From the NCBI GenBank assembly GCA_002269645.1, contig NIVC01000299.1, positions 248,001-312,000 of the forward strand: DNA of 64,000 nucleotides, in the 5' to 3' direction. Below, piece after piece: positions 5,530 to 49,810 of this stretch. This DNA is from Macrostomum lignano. Lineage: Eukaryota. The notes below the pieces were generated by a model. It saw nothing but the letters and a program-made list of their open reading frames with translations. It made no database searches and was not told the DNA's origin. How positions within the stretch are numbered: position 1 is the first letter of the stretch; every line of letters starts with the position of its first letter. Made by a program: the position numbers and the translations under genes.

Positions 5530-33680
<28,151 letters not shown>

Positions 33681-39018: not shown

Positions 39019-39935
39019 GCACTCGCGCTCACACAAAATGCGTCCTAGATCTGTTGAGCATTTTTAGCATTCTTTCATAGAAGTACTTTAGACAAACTAA
39101 AGTACAAGCAAAGCGAATCCGTTGCCGAAAATTGTCTGCTGGAAAATGAAAGGCTGCAGTAATTGAAAACGATCGATTGTCAATCGCACTGCTTCACAGG
39201 TGAGGATTGGAAATGACGCTGTGAGTCAATATTAAAAATAGTCTGCTCCAGAGATGTGGCGTGAAGCTCCAGTGCCAGCTGCTTTCATCTGCATGCATGG
39301 AAATAACTGGTTGAGCACTTGACTCACTAACGAATTTTACAGGGCATTGGGAACCTTTTGTAGAATAGTGTTAGGGAAGGCAACGTGAGCAGACGTCTGG
39401 AGACTGACCCGAACTCCAGCTGCAGCACCCATGCCCTGAGTCCTCTCTAAGATCAAGAACTCTACCTACCAATGTGGTCTCTAGCTTGGATGAGTTGAAA
39501 TTTTAAAATTGCTTTTCTATTTTTGTGACAAGTTTCCCCAGGAGAGGGCCGGCTTCAGTGATGAACTTCTCCCTAACTACTGCTGAAAACCAAACTGGAA
39601 GAAATTCTTTAGAATCGCAAATTTATTCTGCAACTTCATCATTTCACGTATTGCAAATATTTCTGCTTCGTGAATTAAATAGAAGAGCCTCTCCTCCAAA
39701 ACACGGACTACTTATAGCAGTATTGATAGATCCTTTGTCTTATTTTTCCCATTACTTAACTTTTGCATAACAAATGCAGTTTTCAGGGCGTTTGCAACTT
39801 AAAATAGAGGCTGGAGTCATGAACTTTAGTATCAAAATACAAAAGCAACTTCTAGTGGTCCTTGCAAATAATAATATTTTGAAGTTTATTCGGATTCTTG
39901 TGGATATAATTACGCCCTAAGAAGGTCCATGTAAA

Positions 39936-39975
39936 GTGAGTGAGTGAGTGAGTTAGTTTTTAGTTAGTTAGTTAA

Positions 39976-40070
<95 letters not shown>

Positions 40071-40071
40071 A

Positions 40072-40102
<31 letters not shown>

Positions 40103-40121
40103 ATTAATTAGTTAGTTAGTC

Positions 40122-40169
<48 letters not shown>

Positions 40170-40170
40170 C

Positions 40171-40206
<36 letters not shown>

Positions 40207-40219
40207 ATTAGTTAGTTAA

Positions 40220-40250
<31 letters not shown>

Positions 40251-40269
40251 ATTAATTAGTTAGTTAGTC

Positions 40270-40342
<73 letters not shown>

Positions 40343-40351
40343 ATTAATTAA

Positions 40352-40394
<43 letters not shown>

Positions 40395-40399
40395 ATTAA

Positions 40400-40458
<59 letters not shown>

Positions 40459-40459
40459 A

Positions 40460-40510
<51 letters not shown>

Positions 40511-40529
40511 ATTAATTAGTTAGTTAGTC

Positions 40530-40566
<37 letters not shown>

Positions 40567-40571
40567 ATTAA

Positions 40572-40634
<63 letters not shown>

Positions 40635-40643
40635 ATTAATTAA

Positions 40644-40698
<55 letters not shown>

Positions 40699-40703
40699 AT
40701 AAA

Positions 40704-40763
<60 letters not shown>

Positions 40764-40764
40764 C

Positions 40765-40815
<51 letters not shown>

Positions 40816-40816
40816 C

Positions 40817-40851
<35 letters not shown>

Positions 40852-40852
40852 C

Positions 40853-40895
<43 letters not shown>

Positions 40896-40905
40896 CTACT
40901 TAGTT
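39936..40905. repeat. (TTAG)n microsatellite, ~950 bp, preceded by (GAGT)4
   Basis: Direct observation. Confidence 0.97.
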
Positions 40906-41256
40906 TTAGTTTTTTGAGAGTTATCTTCATTATGAACTTTTCCCTCTATTTGCGCTTGTAATATTCTTTCATGCTACTCCTCGCATTCCGTGAGTAGCTT
41001 ATAAGGACATGCTTTTTTGCGAATGAATTGTTTACACAAAGAAAAATTTCGTAGAAAAGAGGGATATTTTAGCCAGGGCAGTCAATTAATAGCTGGTAAT
41101 TAATTTTGTTAAAATCGAGTATTTTCTCTGTTGATTATGCCTTTGATATACTTTTCTTGACCGCTTTATTAAAAATTTGTAAACAAAAATCTGGAAAAAT
41201 AATTTTCAGTAATCTGGGGAGAGCCTTGCATTGGGATTTTGTAGAATTAATCGGTG

Positions 41257-41429
41257 TTATAATAATCTCCTTTGCCTGCCGATTTGCGCTGGTCGGAGCT
41301 CAGATCGGATTGGCAGGTAGGACACTCGGCAGAATTTGCAGCACCAATTGTAAACAATGTCGTCGCTCCTTGTGAGACACCTCAGCTGGCTTAGCGACCT
41401 CTGGCGCTTGCTGGCCAGCGGCTGGGTAG
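41257..41429 (-). pseudogene. Insulin-like peptide copy 2, A-chain exon (damaged)
   Basis: ttttccag|ct, phase 1. TQPLASKRQRSLSQLRCLTRSDDIVYNWCCKFCRVSYLPIRSELR...: homologous to ILP1 exon 3, but the first CCC Cys is W and QQFCAL is deleted with a frameshift (ancestral stop at 41300-41302). Confidence 0.75.
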
Positions 41430-41539
41430 CTGGAAAATATTAGACTGATGAATTTAAATATGTCAATGACTACCAGAGGTTGATGGGCGAGGATTTTAGG
41501 TAAAAGAAGCCCCAAGCTCCCTTCCAGTTCAGATGGGCT

Positions 41540-43045
41540 GCAGGGTCCATGGTTCAGTTGGCTCCAAGCTCCCTTCCAATCCAGATAGGCTGCAGGGTCC
41601 ATGGTTCAGTTGGCTCCAAGCTCCCTTCCAATCCAGATAGGCTGCAGGATCCATGGTTCAGTTGGCTCCAAGCTCCCTTCCAGTCCAGATAGGCTGCAGG
41701 GTCCATGGTTCAGTTGGCTCCAAGCTCCCTTCCAATCCAGATAGGCTGCAGGGTCCATGGTTCAGTTGGCTCCAAGCTCCCTTCCAATCCAGATAGGCTG
41801 CAGGGTCCATGGTTCAGTTGGCTCCAAGCTCCCTTCCAGTCCAGATAGGCTGCAGGGTCCATGGTTCAGTAAGCTCGAAGCTCCCTTCCAGTCCAGGTGG
41901 GCTTCAGGGTCCATGGTTCAGTTGGCTCCAAGCTCCCTTCCAGTCCAGGTGGGCTGCAGGTCCATGGTACAGTTGGCTCCAAGCTTCCTTCCAGTCCAGG
42001 TGGGCTTCAGGGTCCATGGTTCAGTAAGCTCCAAGCTCCCTTCCAGTCCAGGTGGGCTGCAGGGTCCATGGTTCAGTAAGCTCCAAGCTCCCTTCCAGTC
42101 CAGGTGGGCTGCAGGTCCATGGTTCAGTTGGCTCCAAGCTTCCTTCCAGTCCAGGTGGGCTGCAGGGTCCATGGTTCAGTAAGCTCCAAGCTCCCTTCCA
42201 GTCCAGGTGAACTGCAGGTCCATGGTTCAGTTGGCTCGAAGCTCCCTTCCAGTCCAGGTGGGCTGCAGGGTCCATGGTTCAGTAAGCTCCAAGCTCCCTT
42301 CCAGTCCAGGTGGGCTGCAGGGTCCATGGTTCAGTTGGCTCGAAGCTCCCTTCCAGTCCAGGTGGGCTGCAGGGTCCATGGTTCAGTAAGCTCCAAGCTC
42401 CCTTCCAGTCCAGGTGGGCTGCAGGTCCATGGTTCAGTTGGCTCCAAGCTTCCTTCCAGTCCAGGTGGGCTGCAGGGTCCTTGGTTCAGTAAGCTCCAAG
42501 CTCCCTTCCAGTCCAGGTGGGCTGCAGGGTCCATGGTTCAGTTGGCTCGAAGCTCCCTTCCAGTCCAGGTGGGCTGCAGGGTCCATGGTTCAGTAAGCTC
42601 CAAGCTCCCTTCCAGTCCAGGTGGGCTGCAGGGTCCATGGTTCAGTAAGCTCGAAGCTCCCTTCCAGTCCAGGTGGGCTGCAGGGTCCATGGTTCAGTAA
42701 GCTCCAAGCTCCCTTCCAGTCCAGGTGGGCTGCAGGGTCCATGGTTCAGTTGGCTCCAAGCTCCCTTCCAGTCCAGGTGGGCTGCAGGGTCCATGGTTCA
42801 GTTGGCTCCAAGCTCCCTTCCAGTCCAGGTGAACTGCAGGTCCATGGTTCAGTAAGCTCCAAGCTCCCTTCCAGTCCAGATAGGCTGCAGGGTCCATGGT
42901 TCAGTAGCCTCCAAGCTCTCTACCAGTCCAGATAGTCTGCGGAGTCTATGATTTAGTAAACTCGAAGCTCCCTTCCAGTCCAGGAGGGCTGCAGGGTCCA
43001 TGGTTCAGTAGCTCTTAACTGATCCCTTCCAGTCCAGGTCGGCTG
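41540..43045. repeat. 51/52-bp minisatellite (ggttcagttggctccaagctcccttccagtccaggtgggctgcagggtccat) filling the ILP2 intron
   Basis: About 29 copies. Confidence 0.97.
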
Positions 43046-43066
43046 CAGGGTCCATGGCTAACTCAC

Positions 43067-43199
43067 TCAGCCGCCGCAACGCCGTCCCTCGCTTGTCTTC
43101 GTACAGGCCGGCGGTGCTGTCGTAGACGCCGCCCCAGTCGGCGCAGGCGGCGGTCACCTCCTCGATCAGGCGGAGGCCGCACTCGGTCAGCCAGCGGGC
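43067..43199 (-). CDS. Insulin-like peptide copy 2, B-chain exon
   Basis: ctcgcag|ARWLTECGLRLIEEVTAACADWGGVYDSTAGLYEDKRGTALRRL a|gtgagt. C-x11-C B-chain motif and the same 0/1 phases as ILP1 exon 2. Confidence 0.8.
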
Positions 43200-43208
43200 C
43201 TGCGAGTA

Positions 43209-43630
43209 TGTGTGACTCAGCAGCCATAGCATGTGTGACTCAGCAGCCATAGCATGTGTGACTCAGCAGCCATAGCATGTGTGACTCAGCAGCCATAGCA
43301 TGTGTGACTCAGCAGCCATAGCATGTGTGACTCAGCAGCCATAGCATGTGTGACTCAGCAGCCATAGCATGTGTGACTCAGCAGCCATAGCATGTGTGAC
43401 TCAGCAGCCATAGCATGTGTGACTCAGCAGCCATAGCATGTGTGACTCAGCAGCCATAGCATGTGTGACTCAGCAGCCATAGCATGTGTGACTCAGCAGC
43501 CATAGCATGTGTGACTCAGCAGCCATAGCATGTGTGACTCAGCAGCCATAGCATGTGTGACTCAGCAGCCATAGCATGTGTGACTCAGCAGCCATAGCAT
43601 GTGTGACTCAGCAGCCATAGCATGTGACTC
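43209..43630. repeat. 23-bp minisatellite (catgtgtgactcagcagccatag) x18
   Basis: Direct observation. Each unit contains GTGACTCAGCA. Confidence 0.97.
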
Positions 43631-43867
43631 ACAGGATCGCTAGCCGATTGGCTGTCTCGACTGATTGGCTGGCCTCAGAACCCGCGCGAGTTTGCAATTT
43701 TACGCAATAAGCTCACAATGCCGCATCTTCCGAACTTCTGAAGTTTCTCAACTATAGTTTATGGCGAAACCCCATTTTTAGTATATGGATTTGCGAAATC
43801 TGTTTTAAAATCTTAAGTCTGTATTTAGAGCGTTGTAATCTATCTGAAGTAATATACTAGATTTGTG

Positions 43868-44417
43868 CAGCCCATTTGGGCTTACGCGCACCTCCATTAG
43901 CAACTGCTTTGGAGGAGTAAGATCAGTCACTATGACCCTATGCTAGGCTGATGAACGAATGCCATTGGCTTGTGATCGAAGCGCTCGACATAAATGAACA
44001 CCCAAATGACATTGTAAGGTTGTAAGATTGTTGAATATAAAAGAAAAGATGGTTAACAGCATCCATCGGCGCGTTGAAACCACTGCCGGCAGAGGTCGCC
44101 TACGAAAGGGTGGCAATCGCCAAGGCAAGTTGGTCGAGAGCCTCAGCCCCAGGTCGAACCCTTTGGTGACGGAGCAGAAAATGCAGCAAAGTTGAAGGAA
44201 CAGTTCTGATTGGTTATCAGATTTTGACTATCAGAAGAGCTCTGGAAAAGGCACTGAAAATTGTTGGTAGAGACGCTGACAGTTTGCCGAATGACTGACG
44301 AGGGTTTGGACCAAATTAAGTGCCGCTGTGCCAGCCTTGCTACCATAGACAAAAGCTCCACTGCACTGGCAAGCGTGTCTTGGATTGAATTAAATGCATG
44401 TAAGCCCAAATGGCCTG
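43868..44417. mobile_element. ~550-bp element with ~20-bp TIRs (cag.ccatttgggcttac) between ILP1 and ILP2
   Basis: cagcccatttgggcttac at 43868 versus gtaagcccaaatggcctg ending at 44417. The internal sequence is homologous to 27400-28480. Confidence 0.6.
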
Positions 44418-44696
44418 AAAAGGCCATATTTAATTTTACAGATTTTTCCCAACGAGCTTGTGAAACATCCTTCGACGAAACGCTACGCGCAGATGCAGTG
44501 GGAAACACAGAGCTAAAATGTCCGTACGCCAAAAGAGCCATGATTTTGAGAGTTATTTGGGAAACTTTTTGGTCGCAGAACTCTCTGCGTTCGATTTTAA
44601 TGAATTTTTATTCATGTTAATATCGTATTGGTGGCAAGTTTGTCAAATTCATTCGAGCTTTGTCACTCCGGATCAGAGAGGCAGCTCAACTCGGAC

Positions 44697-45336
44697 TCAG
44701 ACGGGCTCAGGCAGGGCGCAGAACTGCTGCAGGTAGGAGACGCGGCACCAGCGGCAGCAGCACTGGTTCACCACGTCATTGCTCTTGTTGAGCCGGCAGC
44801 CAAGGTCGAAGATGCTCGGCACGCTGCTCCTCTTGCTGGCGGCGACGCCTGCGGGCAGCGAGACGGGGCGAGTTTGCAACGGGTTTGCTGCTGGGGATTC
44901 CCTATTGGGAAGAGAGAGGAGAAAATGCACTGGGCAAGTTTGAAACGGGTTTGCTGCTGGGGATTCCCTATTGGGAAGAGAGAGGAGAAAATGCACTGGG
45001 CAAGTTTGCAGCAAGACACGCACGGTCCAGCAGTGCCGCGGTGGCCAGTCTCTGCCGGCGCCGGCTCACGAGCTGCCCGTAGATGCCGCTGGTGCTGTCG
45101 TAGACCCCGCCGCGGTCAGCGCAGGCGTTCCGGAGCTCCTGCACCAGACGCTCGCCGCACTCGTTGATTGACTCATTCTGCGAATCAGGTTGCGAGGCCG
45201 GTTGGCGAGTGGCTGCACGGAGGCGAGTCCTGGCATGGGAGATTCAGGAGAGAGAGGGACTTACCGGATCCTTGTAGGCCGCGCAGGAGGCGGTGAGGCA
45301 GGCAAAAGCCAGGGCGGTCAGCGCGAAGGCGTTCAT
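44697..45336 (-). CDS. Insulin-like peptide precursor (ILP1), 3 exons, 125 aa, 8 Cys in the mature chains
   Basis: complement(join(44697-44848, 45024-45177, 45265-45336)): MNAFALTALAFACLTASCAAYKDP|NESINECGERLVQELRNACADRGGVYDSTSGIYGQLVSRRRQRLATAALLD|RVAASKRSSVPSIFDLGCRLNKSNDVVNQCCCRWCRVSYLQQFCALPEPV*. B chain C-x11-C, A chain CC-x3-C-x8-C, basic cleavage sites, GT-AG introns in phases 0 and 1. Confidence 0.9.
44875..45005. repeat. 63-bp tandem duplication in ILP1 intron 2
   Basis: gggtttgctgctggggattccctattgggaagagagaggagaaaatgcactgggcaagtt x2. Confidence 0.9.
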
Positions 45337-45421: not shown

Positions 45422-45430
45422 CTATTTATG
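45422..45430 (-). promoter_or_regulatory. TATA-like box (CATAAATAG) upstream of ILP1
   Basis: About 90 nt upstream of the ILP1 ATG on the minus strand. Confidence 0.35.
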
Positions 45431-46089
45431 CTTTCGGGGCTGCGGCCTCATTGGCCCCCGCCCCAGCTTCCGGCGCCGCTTTGGCGCTCGACTTTCAAAA
45501 GAGTCCCCCACGAAAAAGAGGAGATTTTGCCGCGTTTTTGCCGACTCAGTGGCTGCCGGATTTGCTCAATCAATTATTTCGCTCTGCTAGTGCAGTAATT
45601 GAATGTAAACAGCAAATTCTGTTTAAATACAGTGCATGTATGAAGCCTCGGGACTAAAAATAGTCAGTGAGTTTGGCCGCGGTGCCTCCATGTGGATCAG
45701 CTCTATGCAGATGCAGACGCTAATCCTCACCCTATGTGTCAGTCTCCCGCTGACTCAATCTTAATCTCAAAAACCTCAAAAACAGGGGAGTGGCATGCCT
45801 TATAGGGGAGAAGAACTGGCTTTAAATCCCCTTAATGCATAGATTAGAGACTACGCAAATCCCAATGACATTCAAGCGGCACCCGGTAGGGTAACACTCA
45901 GTTCTCTGTAGAGTACTCAGAGCTGCCATATCAGAGTCTCAGAGGCCCTCAGATCACGCCGCAAAGAACACCCCCCGCATAAAAAACAAAAGAAGGAAGC
46001 CATCAAGACGCGCCGGTGTCCATCAATAAACAGTGATGCTTACCAAGACACAATGGCGCCCACGATGAGACAGAGGCGGCACTTTCTAG

Positions 46090-46735
46090 GAAACAGGGAC
46101 AGGGGCGCCATCCCAGAGACAGTGGCGCCACCCCAGAAACAGGGGCGCCACCCCAGAGACAGAGGCGGCACCCAAGAGAAAGGGGCGCCACCCAAGAGAC
46201 AGGGGCGCCACCCCAGAAACAGGGGCGCTACCCCAGAGACAGAGGCGGCACCCCAGAGACAGAGGCGGCACCCAAGAGAAAGGGGCGCCACCCAAGAGAC
46301 AGGGGCGCCACCCCAGAAACAGGGGCGCTACCCCAGAGACAGAGGCGGCACCCCAGAGACATGGGCGGCACCCCAGAGACAGGGGCGGCACCCAAGAGAC
46401 AGAGGCGCCACCCCAGAGACAGGGGCGCCACCCCAGAAACAGGGGCGCTACCCCAGAGACAGAGGCGGCACCCAAGAGACAGGGGCGCCACCCAAGAGAC
46501 AGGAGCGCCACCCAAGAGACAGAGGCGCCACCCAAGAGACAGGGGCGCCACCCAAGAGACAGGGGCGGCACCCCAGAGACAGGGCGCCACAGAGACAGGG
46601 GCGCCACCAGAGACAGGGCGCCACCCAAGAACAGGCGCCACCCAAGAGACAGGGGCGCCACCCAAGAGACAGGGGCGCCACCCAAGAGACAGGGGCGGCA
46701 CCCAAGAGACAGGGGCTCTACCCCAGAGACAGAGG
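46090..46735. repeat. 20-bp GC-rich minisatellite (cacccaagagacaggggcgc)
   Basis: Direct observation. Confidence 0.95.
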
Positions 46736-47364
46736 CGCCAGCCAATTGACAGGAGCGCAATAAACAGGGAAGCGCCAGACAGAAGTGCCCTCGCCAAAAA
46801 GACAGAGGCCTCCACCCAAGAGGCAGGGGCGCCACCAAGCCTCAACATCTGTAGAGTAAATGCCTAAGCGCGATAAATTTAATGAATGAAAAAGCATTCA
46901 TTGTTTTTAATTTTTGCTTTATTGAAAGTAAAATGCGGCGGGGGTTTTCCGCTGCCAACCAGCCGGCCGCCCCTGCAGAAGTTATCCTGCAGGACTTCAA
47001 CTGTCACACCGGGCCAATTCTGTTTGCCAAACCGCCCACGCATTCATCTGCCCGACTGTGCCCGCCTAGCAACAGAAAGAGCTCGGGGATCTCAGGTATC
47101 AAAGACTGCAGAAGTAGGCCTGCTTTTTTCGCGCCAATTTTCAAGCTGTGAATCTGCAAAACTTACTGGCGCTTTTTTGCGCCGCTTTCGCTTTGAGTCT
47201 CGCCTGACGGAACCCGACGCTTCCTGGCTATAAAGCGATTCTTTGTTGCAAAAAAGCGAAAATGAAAGTCGCTTCATGCCCGTGAAAAGTCCTTTTGCCT
47301 TTTGCTGTTTGCCTCAATGTGTTCTAGTTAATGTCCAAGTATATCTCTGTGTCTGTCTCGGAGC

Positions 47365-49810
47365 ATGTTTCAGTGTCTGTCTCAGTGTCTGTTTCAGTGT
47401 CTGTCTCAGTGTCTGTCTCAGTGTCTGTCTCAGTGCCTGTCTCAGTGTCTGTCTCAGTGCCTGTCTTAGTATCAGTCTCAGTGTCTGTCTCAGTATCAGT
47501 CTCAGTGTGTGTCTCAGTATCAGTCTCAGTGTGTGTCTCAGTATCAGTCTCAGTGTGTGTCTCAGTATCAGTCTCAGTGTCTGTCTCAGTGTCTGTCTCA
47601 GTGTCTGTCTCAGTGTCTGTCTCAGTGTCTGCCTCAGTGTCTGCCTCAGTGTCTGTCTCAGTGCCTGTCTCAGTGTCTGCCTCAGTGTCTGTCTCAGTGT
47701 CTGTCTCAGTGCCTGTCTCAGTGTCTGTCTCAGTGTCTGTCTCAGTGCCTGTCTCAGTGTCTGCCTCAGTGTCTGTCTCAGTGTCTGTCTCAGTGCCTGT
47801 CTCAGTGTCTGCCTCAGTGTCTGTCTCAGAATCAGTCTCAGTGTCTGCCTCAGTATCTGTCTCAGTGTCTGTCTCAGTATCAGTCTCAGTGTCTGTCTCA
47901 GTGTCTGTCTCAGTGTCTGTCTCAGTGTCTGTCTCAGTATCAGTCTCAGTGTGTGTCTCAGTGTCTGTCTCAGTGTCTGTCTCAGTGCCTGTCTCAGTGT
48001 CTGCCTCAGTGTCTGTCTCAGTGTCTGTCTCAGTGCCTGTCTCAGTGTCTGCCTCAGTGTCTGTCTCAGAATCAGTCTCAGTGTCTGCCTCAGTATCTGT
48101 CTCAGTGTCTGTCTCAGTGTCTGTCTCAGTGCCTGTCTTAGTATCAGTCTCAGTGTCTGTCTCAGTATCAGTCTCAGTGTGTGTCTCAGTATCAGTCTCA
48201 GTGTGTGTCTCAGTATCAGTCTCAGTGTGTGTCTCAGTATCAGTCTCAGTGTCTGTCTCAGTGTCTGTCTCAGTGTCTGTCTCAGTGTCTGTCTCAGTGT
48301 CTGCCTCAGTGTCTGCCTCAGTGTCTGTCTCAGTGCCTGTCTCAGTGTCTGCCTCAGTGTCTGTCTCAGTGTCTGTCTCAGTGCCTGTCTCAGTGTCTGT
48401 CTCAGTGTCTGTCTCAGTGCCTGTCTCAGTGTCTGCCTCAGTGTCTGTCTCAGTGTCTGTCTCAGTGCCTGTCTCAGTGTCTGCCTCAGTGTCTGTCTCA
48501 GAATCAGTCTCAGTGTCTGCCTCAGTATCTGTCTCAGTGTCTGTCTCAGTATCAGTCTCAGTGTCTGTCTCAGTGTCTGTCTCAGTGTCTGTCTCAGTGT
48601 CTGTCTCAGTATCAGTCTCAGTGTGTGTCTCAGTGTCTGTCTCAGTGTCTGTCTCAGTGCCTGTCTCAGTGTCTGCCTCAGTGTCTGTCTCAGTGTCTGT
48701 CTCAGTGCCTGTCTCAGTGTCTGCCTCAGTGTCTGTCTCAGAATCAGTCTCAGTGTCTGCCTCAGTATCTGTCTCAGTGTCTGTCTCAGTGTCTGTCTCA
48801 GTGCCTGTCTTAGTATCAGTCTCAGTGTCTGTCTCAGTATCAGTCTCAGTGTGTGTCTCAGTATCAGTCTCAGTGTGTGTCTCAGTATCAGTCTCAGTGT
48901 GTGTCTCAGTATCAGTCTCAGTGTCTGTCTCAGTGTCTGTCTCAGTGTCTGTCTCAGTGTCTGTCTCAGTGTCTGCCTCAGTGTCTGCCTCAGTGTCTGT
49001 CTCAGTGCCTGTCTCAGTGTCTGCCTCAGTGTCTGTCTCAGTGTCTGTCTCAGTGCCTGTCTCAGTGTCTGTCTCAGTGTCTGTCTCAGTGCCTGTCTCA
49101 GTGTCTGCCTCAGTGTCTGTCTCAGTGTCTGTCTCAGTGCCTGTCTCAGTGTCTGCCTCAGTGTCTGTCTCAGAATCAGTCTCAGTGTCTGCCTCAGTAT
49201 CTGTCTCAGTGTCTGTCTCAGTATCAGTCTCAGTGTCTGTCTCAGTGTCTGTCTCAGTGTCTGTCTCAGTGTCTGTCTCAGTATCAGTCTCAGTGTGTGT
49301 CTCAGTGTCTGTCTCAGTGTCTGTCTCAGTGCCTGTCTCAGTGTCTGCCTCAGTGTCTGTCTCAGTGTCTGTCTCAGTGCCTGTCTCAGTGTCTGCCTCA
49401 GTGTCTGTCTCAGAATCAGTCTCAGTGTCTGCCTCAGTATCTGTCTCAGTGTCTGTCTCAGTATCAGTCTCAGTGTCTGTCTCAGTGTCTGTCTCAGTGT
49501 CTGTCTCAGTGTCTGTCTCAGTGTCTGTCTCAGTGTCTGTCTCAGTATCAGTCTCAGTGTGTGTCTCAGTGTCTGTCTCAGTGTGTCTCAGTGCCTGTCT
49601 TAGTATCTGTCTCAGTATCAGTCTCAGTGTCTGCCTCAGTGTCTGCCTCAGTGTCTGTCTCCGTGCCTGTCTCAGTGTCTGTCTCAGTGTCTGTCTCAGT
49701 GTGTCTCAGTGTCTGTCTCAGTGTCTGTCTCAGTGTCTGTCTCAGTGTCTGTCTCAGTGTCTGTCTCAGTGCCTGTCTCAGTGTCTGTCTCAGTGTCTGT
49801 CTCAGTGTCT
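47365..49810. repeat. 12-bp satellite (gtctgtctcagt variants) organised as a 672-bp higher-order repeat
   Basis: The variant pattern repeats exactly at 47509, 48181 and 48853. Confidence 0.95.

What the first reader, a model, noticed from the sequence alone, without database searches (positions are those of the whole stretch)
41257..45336. Tandem ILP pair in which the second copy may borrow the first copy's signal-peptide exon
Seen: a second B-chain exon (43067-43199, LTECGLRLIEEVTAACADWGGVYDST versus INECGERLVQELRNACADRGGVYDST) and a second A-chain exon (41257-41429) lie downstream of ILP1 on the same strand with identical intron phases (0, then 1). I found no signal-peptide exon between 43200 and 44696. 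That interval holds only a 23-bp satellite, a short donor-terminated segment ending in ...SASDP|gtgagt at 43633 (echoing ILP1's KDP|gtaagt), and a TIR element. Because ILP1 exon 1 ends in phase 0, it could splice directly to the ILP2 B exon. Inference: either one locus makes two different insulins by alternative B/A cassette choice, or ILP2 lost its first exon to the transposon insertion.
Basis: partly seen in the sequence, partly recalled or inferred. Interest (0 to 1): 0.7.

Follow-up and report, generated by a model that had tools for sequence, protein, structure and literature searches.

The report
Decaying second insulin-like gene copy
Beside an intact insulin-like hormone gene of the flatworm Macrostomum lignano lies a second copy with no leader exon and a frame-breaking deletion that removes an essential cysteine, so it is most likely a recently dead duplicate, not a gene that borrows its neighbour's first exon.

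Summary
The window is Macrostomum lignano scaffold NIVC01000299.1. ILP1 (minus strand, 3 exons) is the annotated Mlig006842 insulin-like peptide. No signal-peptide exon lies between the genes.

- An arginine kept in all four aligned relatives is Trp in the B chain.
- CysA6 is Trp.
- An 11-bp deletion at 41316/41315 shifts the frame and removes CysA20.

A second genomic copy (L003) keeps those 11 bp. In the old frame it reads VSYLHNLC, like ILP1's VSYLQQFC, but it carries a different 2-bp frameshift. ILP1's coding sequence in the same copies shows only point changes and no indels.

ILP2 fails the flatworm signature CCCX2CX8C and the Pfam Insulin threshold, and NCBI annotates no protein for it. 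A paralogous cluster holds three tandem ILP genes, each with its own signal exon and CCAAT–TATA promoter. ILP2 keeps two CCAAT boxes, and then the 23-bp satellite begins where TATA, start site and exon 1 would lie.

The "SASDP|gtgagt" echo is no better than chance.

Verdict: a recently inactivated tandem duplicate. Exon borrowing is unsupported but cannot be excluded for the ancestral gene without RNA data.

The parts
45423..45454 (-). ILP1 core promoter: CCAAT box (45454-45450) and ATAAATA TATA-like box (45429-45423), 118 and 93 nt before the ATG
   Evidence: The same CCAAT...TATA pairing sits upstream of the three ILP genes of locus L004.
45265..45336 (-). ILP1 exon 1: MNAFALTALAFACLTASCAAYKDP (signal peptide), GTAAGT donor, phase 0
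   Evidence: Hydrophobic core score 2.24. 100% identical to PAA85949.
45024..45177 (-). ILP1 exon 2: B chain and C-peptide start, ends in phase 1
   Evidence: Pfam Insulin 26.4 bits, cut-off 23.
44697..44848 (-). ILP1 exon 3: C-peptide end, KR site, A chain GCRLNKSNDVVNQCCCRWCRVSYLQQFCALPEPV, stop
   Evidence: Fits the flatworm signature CCCX2CX8C (PMC5391603).
44607..44612 (-). AATAAA poly(A) signal of ILP1, 85 nt after its stop codon
43862..44428 (-). Non-autonomous TIR transposon between ILP1 and ILP2. Holds a hydrophobic ORF piece (44062-44000) with a poor GTTCAT donor.
   Evidence: TIR core at 44413-44400 and 43872-43885; 83-86% identical relative at 27391-28563..
43647..43668 (-). Two CCAAT boxes (CAGCCAATCAG, CAGCCAATCGG): probable remnant of ILP2's own promoter. 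No TATA follows, because the satellite starts 14 bp downstream.
   Evidence: inference from the promoter layout of four intact family members
43208..43633 (-). 23-bp satellite (GCTGCTGAGTCACACATGCTATG, 18 perfect units plus a degenerate first unit that holds the 'gtgagt'). Ends 8 bp before the B-exon acceptor, where TATA, start site, exon 1 and intron 1 would be expected.
   Evidence: Array length differs between genomic copies.
43067..43199 (-). ILP2 B-chain exon: ARWLTECGLRLIEEVTAACADWGGVYDSTAGLYEDKRGTALRRL, phase 0 in and phase 1 out. The Arg kept in all four aligned relatives is Trp (codon 43136-43134).
   Evidence: GC3 0.955. Identical in all four assembled copies.
41512..43057 (-). 52-bp satellite (29.8 units) filling most of the ILP2 intron
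41257..41429 (-). ILP2 A-chain exon, damaged: CysA6 is Trp (TGG, 41346-41344), and an 11-bp deletion between 41316 and 41315 shifts the frame and removes CysA20. The present reading ...WCCKFCRVSYLPIRSELRPAQIGRQRRLL ends at TAA.
   Evidence: Copy L003 keeps the 11 bp (old frame VSYLHNLC) but lacks GA (41327-41326).
41165..41170 (-). AATAAA poly(A) signal retained downstream of ILP2

Best explanation
ILP2 is an unprocessed, tandemly duplicated paralogue of the Macrostomum lignano insulin-like peptide gene ILP1 (Mlig006842). It was functional for most of its history and has recently been inactivated.

Shown:
- It keeps the family's exon structure: a phase 0 acceptor, a phase 1 donor and acceptor, and a poly(A) signal.
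- It keeps strong codon bias in the B exon.
- It has lost three positions that are identical in all four aligned relatives: the B-chain Arg, CysA6 and CysA20.
- CysA20 was lost through an 11-bp frameshifting deletion.
- A sister genomic copy carries a different frameshift in the same exon.
- No leader exon exists between the two genes.

Inferred:
- ILP2 once had its own promoter and signal-peptide exon, like every other ILP gene of this species examined here.
- Two CCAAT boxes survive from that promoter.
- The TATA box, start site, exon 1 and nearly all of intron 1 were lost where the young 23-bp satellite now lies.
- Whatever RNA is still made from the exons cannot give a secreted, correctly disulfide-bonded insulin-like peptide.
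For: (1) Coding lesions.
- The family alignment shows ILP2 differing at the Arg and at two Cys that are identical in ILP1, two other M. lignano ILPs and a Fasciola ILP.
- The flatworm A-chain signature is CCCX2CX8C (PMC5391603). ILP2 reads WCCX2CX8S.
- Pfam Insulin scores 15.6 bits for ILP2, below the cut-off of 23. ILP1 scores 26.4.

(2) Copy comparison.
- The window, L001 and L002 lack 11 bp (TGCACAACTTG) that L003 keeps.
- With those 11 bp the old frame reads CRVSYLHNLC, with Cys exactly 8 residues after the previous Cys, as in the other family members compared.
- L003 instead lacks 2 bp upstream, which is a second, independent frameshift.
- In the same copies the 378-nt ILP1 coding sequence shows four point differences: one changes residue 3 of the signal peptide, at least two are synonymous, and there are no indels.

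(3) No leader.
- A scan of all ATG-to-GT phase-0 segments, tblastn with five family signal exons, and hydrophobicity scores find nothing comparable. Candidates score 0.96-1.14 against 2.2-3.6 for real family signal peptides.
- The one hydrophobic piece lies inside the transposon and has a GTTCAT donor.

(4) Family norm.
- Locus L004 holds three tandem ILP genes. Each has its own Met-plus-signal exon, and each has a CCAAT (or inverted ATTGG) box about 25-40 bp before a TATA-like box.
- ILP2 keeps CCAAT boxes, but the satellite begins 14 bp later.

(5) Annotation.
- No protein in NCBI's transcriptome-based annotation covers ILP2 in any of the three loci.

(6) Recency.
- B-exon GC3 is 0.955, against 0.31-0.41 GC in the flanks.
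- Relative-rate counts against the two M. lignano outgroups are not significant: 11 vs 7 and 5 vs 7.
Against: - No RNA data could be consulted, so lack of expression is not shown.
- The missing NCBI annotation could also mean only that no ATG-started ORF was found.
- B-exon codon bias, intact splice sites and a poly(A) signal would also fit a gene that is still in use.
- The window allele has an even number of cysteines (6), so a non-canonical peptide cannot be excluded on sequence alone.
- The 2-bp gap in L003 could be an assembly error. That copy would then keep a full-length A chain with 7 Cys.
- Pairwise dN/dS between ILP1 and ILP2 is 0.53, which decides nothing.
- The CCAAT pair could be chance: about 0.4 CCAAT or ATTGG are expected in 228 bp.
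Confidence: 0.7

Rival explanations
1. Shared leader exon. Transcription from the ILP1 promoter reads through the ILP1 poly(A) site. Exon 1 (donor after 45265) splices either to ILP1 exon 2 or to the ILP2 B exon (43199), so one signal peptide serves two hormone cassettes, as in calcitonin/CGRP-type alternative 3' exon choice.
For: - Both junctions are phase 0, and the B exon has a normal AG acceptor.
- No other leader exon lies between the genes.
- ILP2 stayed open, with conserved motifs and high GC3, for a long time after the duplication, so it needed some signal peptide.
- M. lignano makes polycistronic pre-mRNAs (PMC8629364).
Against: - The phase match is the ancestral family structure: L004 gene c also has a phase 0 junction after its signal exon.
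- The ILP2 cassette is now broken.
- All three genes of the paralogous tandem cluster have their own leader exons and promoters.
- CCAAT boxes lie upstream of ILP2.
- Neither chimeric UniProt model uses an exon 1 to B junction. Both run through ILP1 exons 2-3 by cryptic sites, as ab initio predictions do.
- The polypyrimidine and branch region of the acceptor has been replaced by the satellite.
Confidence: 0.08
2. ILP2 is still a working gene with its own unrecognised 5' exon. Candidates are the transposon-derived MLLTIFSFIFNNLTTLQCHLG piece at 44062-44000, or an exon outside the interval. It would make a divergent 6-Cys peptide with a new C-terminus.
For: - The transposon-internal ORF piece has a signal-like hydrophobic core (2.59) and ends in phase 0 at a GT.
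- The window allele has an even number of Cys.
- Splice sites and a poly(A) signal are intact.
Against: - The donor GTTCAT is poor, and the piece is ordinary transposon sequence whose ATG is not kept in the other copy.
- The cysteine at the A20 position, which pairs with B19 in canonical insulins (general knowledge), is lost. It is kept in all four aligned relatives.
- Two genomic copies carry different frameshifts.
- No annotated protein covers it.
Confidence: 0.08
3. ILP2 is the downstream gene of an SL-resolved operon. The 35-nt spliced leader, which ends in ATG, is trans-spliced to the B-exon acceptor and supplies the start codon in frame.
For: - The SL sequence ends in ATG (PMC8629364).
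- The acceptor is phase 0, so SL-ATG|GCC CGC TGG would read MARWLTECG...
- The ILP1-ILP2 distance without repeats is about 510 bp (1497 - 567 - 419). That is under the 1-kb operon criterion of that paper.
Against: - The product would have no signal peptide (hydrophobic score 1.05), so it could not be a secreted hormone.
- The A chain is broken regardless.
- No SL read data were available.
Confidence: 0.04
4. The lesions are assembly artefacts of the PacBio-based Mlig_3_7 assembly, and ILP2 is intact in the animal.
For: - Mlig_3_7 is a long-read assembly with redundant copies (PMC8629364).
- The older ML2 models of this locus are full of frameshifts (P0002, P0003, P0007).
Against: - The 11-bp gap is present in three independently assembled copies on two scaffolds. 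It is not a homopolymer error.
- The TGG codons are identical in all copies.
- The ILP1 coding sequence in the same copies has no indels.
- Even with both indels undone, the gene lacks CysA6 and a leader exon.
Confidence: 0.05

Closest known systems
Flatworm insulin-like peptides (Schistosoma SjILP/SmILP, Fasciola gigantica ILP WUG45439, M. lignano Mlig006842, Mlig027486/029872, Mlig020476)
   Same: - B chain C-X11-C and a GG(V/I)Y motif.
- Dibasic sites around a C-peptide.
- A chain with an extra upstream Cys and CCCX2CX8C (alignment).
- ILP1 fits completely.
- The ILP2 B exon and the first two thirds of its A exon are clearly homologous.
   Different: - ILP2 reads WCCX2C, and after the deletion no Cys remains at the A20 position.
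- It has no signal peptide.
- It falls below the Pfam Insulin threshold.
- Schistosome ILP genes have two exons, while the M. lignano genes here have three.
Tandem ILP cluster of M. lignano on NIVC01001059.1 (locus L004)
   Same: Several ILP paralogues lie head to tail on one strand within a few kb. Gene c, the only one checked, has the same phase 0 junction after its signal exon.
   Different: There each gene has its own Met-plus-signal exon, its own CCAAT/TATA promoter and an annotated protein. In the window the second gene has neither a leader exon nor an annotated product.
Unprocessed (duplicated) pseudogenes
   Same: - A tandem copy with introns.
- Frame-disrupting indels that differ between alleles or copies.
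- Loss of residues that the other family members keep.
- Loss of the promoter core and first exon.
   Different: Decay is very recent: the ORF is still open to a nearby stop, B-exon GC3 is 0.955, and the splice and poly(A) signals are intact. Expression status is unknown.
Calcitonin/CGRP (CALCA)-type alternative 3' hormone cassettes (from general knowledge)
   Different: No junction evidence exists here. The two cassettes are whole-gene paralogues, the second is damaged, and a promoter remnant lies between them.
SL trans-spliced operons of M. lignano (PMC8629364)
   Same: Same-strand neighbours lie less than 1 kb apart once repeats are subtracted. The SL ends in ATG and would be in frame with the B exon.
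   Different: An SL-initiated product would lack a signal peptide. No SL evidence was available.

Membership tests
Insulin/IGF/relaxin superfamily (Pfam PF00049) | Whole-protein score at or above the Pfam gathering cut-off (23 bits) | tested here: not met
   ILP2 conceptual product scores 15.6 bits (E = 0.034). ILP1 scores 26.4 bits and passes.
Insulin/IGF/relaxin superfamily (Pfam PF00049) | B chain with two Cys spaced C-X11-C | tested here: met
   ILP2 has ECGLRLIEEVTAAC, the same spacing as ILP1.
Insulin/IGF/relaxin superfamily (Pfam PF00049) | A chain CC-X3-C-X8-C (A6, A7, A11, A20) | tested here: not met
   ILP2 has W at A6 (TGG 41346-41344) and no Cys at A20 after the 11-bp deletion.
Insulin/IGF/relaxin superfamily (Pfam PF00049) | N-terminal signal peptide | tested here: not met
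   No Met-initiated hydrophobic exon with a usable phase-0 donor lies in 43200-44696. No similarity to five family signal exons was found.
Flatworm ILP subfamily | A-chain signature CCCX2CX8C (PMC5391603) plus an upstream extra Cys | tested here: not met
   ILP1 has C-X11-CCC-RW-C-X8-C and fits. ILP2 has C-X11-WCC-KF-C-X8-S and does not.
Unprocessed pseudogene | Clear homology to a functional paralogue, with introns retained | tested here: met
   tblastn E = 2e-10 and 8e-6 against ILP1. Intron positions and phases are the same.
Unprocessed pseudogene | Frame-disrupting mutation relative to the ancestral reading frame | tested here: met
   An 11-bp deletion in the window, L001 and L002, and an independent 2-bp deletion in L003. 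The ancestral frame is recovered as VSYLHNLC.
Unprocessed pseudogene | Relaxed selection compared with the functional copy | tested here: inconclusive
   - dN/dS is 0.53 pairwise.
- Relative-rate counts are 11:7 and 5:7 (not significant) and 12:3 (p = 0.035), depending on the outgroup.
- Between genomic copies, indels occur only in ILP2, not in ILP1.
Unprocessed pseudogene | No (or only non-productive) expression | not testable with these tools
The only indirect evidence is that no annotated protein exists.
   No transcript data. No database protein contains the junction ...AAYKDP|ARWLTE.
   The ILP2 cassette lacks two canonical Cys and is frameshifted.
SL-resolved operon | Same-strand neighbour less than 1 kb away after subtracting repeats, and an SL-accepting 3' splice site | tested here: inconclusive
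   The distance criterion is met: about 510 bp (criterion from PMC8629364). SL usage is not testable, and an SL-ATG product would have no signal peptide.

The most novel reading that the evidence does not exclude
Until its recent inactivation, the ILP2 B/A cassette was expressed by splicing from ILP1's exon 1. It may still be expressed this way in a haplotype whose A exon is intact, if the 2-bp gap in L003 is an assembly error. One promoter and one signal-peptide exon would then have served two alternative insulin-like hormones, in a calcitonin/CGRP-like arrangement not described for the insulin family.
Probability: 0.06. Interest if true: 0.65.

Novelty: new member of a known kind. Interest (0 to 1): 0.2.

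Why it matters
Little beyond correct annotation.

- The Mlig006842 locus holds one working ILP gene and one unannotated, recently decayed paralogue.
- Two UniProt models of this locus (A0A1I8F3V9 and A0A1I8INL0) are chimeras that should not be used as ILP sequences.
- For work on insulin signalling in this regeneration model, ILP2 should not be counted as a ligand without RNA or peptide evidence.
- The pair is a small, clean example of very recent pseudogenisation. Different frameshifts sit in near-identical genomic copies, in a genome with redundant, recently duplicated regions.
- A satellite array occupies the place of a promoter core and first exon.

Tried and rejected
- **ILP2 conceptual protein against 5.8 billion clusters:** no hit at E <= 10. 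It did not even find the chimeric model that contains the B exon, so the word index limits this negative.
- **P0003:** not on record.
- **Literature:** no paper mentions Mlig006842. No paper on M. lignano ILPs turned up.
- **Homology between the ILP1 promoter, exon 1 and intron 1 and the 228 bp upstream of the satellite:** none above shuffles. The 'KDP/SASDP' echo is rejected.
- **Mini-exon 'via 43633':** a 12-codon piece CAG|CCA...CCT|GT is formally possible. It has no pyrimidine tract and no support, so I dropped it.
- **Read-through start inside the satellite (MAAESHMLWLLSHTYSQ-ARW..., ORF 43250-43005):** in frame but not signal-like (0.96).
- **ORFs of 132 aa (44541-44143) and 119 aa (opposite strand):** no Pfam match. 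The first runs from unique DNA into the transposon, so I treat it as chance.
- **The repeat finder:** did not report the TIR. A direct pattern search did.
- **dN/dS and relative-rate tests:** do not discriminate.
- **First relative-rate count:** inflated by the frameshifted tail. I redid it without the tail.

Full report
**Where the window comes from.** ILP1's product matches Macrostomum lignano proteins. Locus L002, from scaffold NIVC01000299.1 of assembly GCA_002269645.1 (Mlig_3_7), is 100% identical to the window over every segment compared. The organism is a free-living flatworm with SL trans-splicing and operons. Its 35-nt spliced leader ends in ATG (PMC8629364).

**The observation.**
- On the minus strand, ILP1 has three exons: 45336-45265, 45177-45024 and 44848-44697. 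Together they encode a 125-aa precursor.
- This precursor is identical to PAA85949/PAA85986, annotated Mlig006842 g1 and g3.
- It passes the Pfam Insulin threshold with 26.4 bits against a cut-off of 23.
- It fits the flatworm A-chain signature CCCX2CX8C (PMC5391603).
They have AG acceptors and a GTGAGT donor, and the same phases as ILP1, 0 and then 1.
- Within the window they are the only other ILP-like sequences, with tblastn E = 2e-10 and 8e-6.
- The 23-bp satellite (43208-43626, 18.2 perfect units), the 52-bp satellite in the ILP2 intron (41512-43057) and a TIR element (about 44428-43862) are all real. The TIR element has a longer relative at 27391-28563.

Conceptual ILP2 reads ...LRCLTRSDDIVYNWCCKFCRVSYLPIRSELRPAQIGRQRRLL*. 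I aligned it with ILP1, two other M. lignano ILP families (Mlig027486/029872 and Mlig020476) and a Fasciola ILP. ILP2 alone differs at four columns where the other four sequences are identical:
- the B-chain Arg, which is Trp;
- the first Cys of CCC (A6), which is Trp;
- the last Cys (A20), which is Ser;
- a Glu in the C-terminal tail, which lies inside the frameshifted part.

ILP2 scores 15.6 bits against Pfam Insulin, below the threshold.

**How CysA20 was lost.**
- Mlig_3_7 holds two more copies of the locus, both on NIVC01000300.1: L001 and L003.
- A three-way alignment of the A exon shows that the window and L001 (and L002) lack 11 bp, TGCACAACTTG, between 41316 and 41315. L003 has them.
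- The missing block is flanked by TGC on both sides, as expected for a slippage deletion.
- With those 11 bp, the frame continuous with ...CKFCR reads VSYLHNLCQSDL.... This restores a Cys exactly eight residues after the preceding Cys, as in VSYLQQFC, LSYLYGFC, QSYLERFC, VRYLSGYC, LSYLELYC and LSYMQLYC of the relatives. The 11-bp form is therefore ancestral, and the window allele is a frameshift deletion.
- L003 lacks GA (41327-41326 in window terms) just upstream, so its frame is broken too, by an independent event.
- In the same copies the 378-nt ILP1 coding sequence differs only by four point changes, with no indels. One changes residue 3 of the signal peptide, and at least two are synonymous.

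**The leader exon.**
- I enumerated every ATG-started open segment in 44696-43200 that ends at a GT in phase 0.
- I searched the interval with the signal exons of five family members.
- I compared hydrophobic cores. Family signal peptides score 2.2-3.6 on an 8-residue Kyte-Doolittle window.
- The in-frame satellite read-through start (MAAESHMLWLLSHTYSQ-ARW...) scores 0.96. An SL-supplied ATG gives 1.05. The 44541 ORF gives 1.14.
- Only MLLTIFSFIFNNLTTLQCHLG (44062-44000) is hydrophobic (2.59). It lies inside the transposon, ends at a poor GTTCAT donor, and its ATG is absent from the element's other copy.
- The 'SASDP|gtgagt' segment is a 14-codon run with no ATG behind a TGA. Its resemblance to ILP1's exon 1 end scores no better than 197 of 300 shuffles. 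Its GT lies in the degenerate first satellite unit.

**What the family normally does.**
- A paralogous locus, L004 on NIVC01001059.1, carries three ILP genes in tandem on one strand. Each is annotated and each has its own Met-plus-signal exon.
- In gene c the junction after the signal exon is phase 0. The phase match that suggested exon borrowing is therefore simply the ancestral structure.
- Upstream of those three genes and of ILP1, a CCAAT (or inverted ATTGG) box lies about 25-40 bp before a TATA-like box.
- Upstream of ILP2 there are two CCAAT boxes (43668-43664 and 43651-43647). The satellite starts 14 bp later and runs to 8 bp before the B-exon acceptor.
- I infer that ILP2 once had its own promoter and exon 1, and that the TATA box, start site, exon 1 and intron 1 were lost where the array now lies.
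- The array is perfectly homogeneous, and its length differs between copies, so it is young and dynamic.

**Timing.**
- ILP1 and ILP2 are each other's closest relatives: 47% identical, against 36-40% to Mlig029872.
- Pairwise dS is 0.58 and dN 0.31.
- By rough reasoning, the ILP2 reading frame would not have stayed open over that divergence without selection.
- B-exon GC3 is 0.955, while the flanks are 31-41% GC.
- Relative-rate counts against the two M. lignano outgroups are balanced: 11:7 and 5:7. Against Fasciola the count is 12:3, p = 0.035.
- ILP2 was therefore a working gene for most of its history, and its decay is recent. This fits frameshifts that differ between copies about 1-6% apart.

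**Database models.** NCBI's transcriptome-based annotation has no protein for ILP2 at any of the three loci. Two UniProt entries from the older ML2 assembly contain ILP2 exon pieces:
- A0A1I8F3V9 (P0003) runs from frameshifted ILP1 through transposon sequence into the B exon.
- A0A1I8INL0 (P0005) reads ILP1 to ...PEPV, jumps into the middle of the B exon, takes part of the A exon, and continues into the next genes.

Both avoid stop codons through cryptic sites, as ab initio predictions do. Neither uses an exon 1 to B junction.

**Verdict.**
- The headline interpretation, a borrowed signal exon, is not supported.
- The fallback, a lost first exon, fits, but with the satellite rather than the transposon as the likely site of loss. 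The coding exons are damaged too.
- I put 0.7 on a recently inactivated tandem duplicate.
- Smaller weights go to exon sharing (0.08), an unrecognised own leader with a non-canonical product (0.08), assembly artefact (0.05) and an SL operon (0.04).
- No RNA data could be reached.

Noticed in passing
window 37838-37299 (minus strand): A 179-aa ORF with a strong signal peptide (MRFCGTGSVIAALAVAALVVMATA). It holds about ten tandem AWYVSPRLGKK units, flanked by AYYASPRLGKK and AYYKSPRLGGKR. This is a neuropeptide precursor that would yield xYxSPRL-amide peptides. It matches Pfam PBAN (pyrokinin family) at 41.5 bits against a cut-off of 22.7. It lies 3.4 kb downstream of ILP2 on the same strand.
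   Followed up: partly
L002 17644-18051 (window 37693-37286) and L001 17594-18133: In L002 the called gene over the neuropeptide locus is a 135-aa ORF in a different frame (MPVLGWERRLGTSALVSARRPGTS...) from the 179-aa PRL-amide precursor frame. In L001 the gene span equals the 540-nt ORF but the product is listed as 124 aa. The annotated products of this gene look unreliable.
   Followed up: no
L004 3163-11538 (NIVC01001059.1): Three tandem ILP genes (136, 161 and 171 aa products) lie on one strand next to a P-type cation ATPase gene. The middle gene has a variant A-chain pattern, CC-T-C-X2-C-X8-C.
   Followed up: partly
window 27391-28563 (+) and 44428-43862: Two members of one TIR transposon family (83-86% identical; TIR core CCATTTGGGCTTAC). 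The longer copy carries an internal tandem array that reads as repeated NKHQFGPTSINLVQQASIWS in ORF listings.
   Followed up: partly
window 43208-43633: Each unit of the 23-bp satellite contains TGAGTCA, the AP-1/TRE consensus (from memory). That gives about 18 perfect copies directly upstream of the ILP2 B exon.
   Followed up: no
UniProt A0A1I8F3V9, A0A1I8INL0, A0A1I8FJR3, A0A1I8FP83 (P0003, P0005, P0002, P0007): Gene models of this locus from the older M. lignano assembly are frameshifted or chimeric. A0A1I8INL0 fuses ILP1, parts of ILP2, the signal peptide of the PRL-amide precursor and further downstream ORFs into 681 aa.
   Followed up: yes
L003 17068-20572: The third copy of the locus is collinear with the window only down to window position ~38836, then diverges. 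The PRL-amide precursor gene is not found within its 20.5 kb. This is a structural difference between copies.
   Followed up: no
window 39935-40905, 46094-46758, 47344-49810, 44866-45008: The locus is packed with tandem repeats: (AGTT)243, a 20-bp array, a 12-bp array of about 206 units, and a 66-bp duplication in ILP1 intron 2 that is absent from copies L001 and L003.
   Followed up: no
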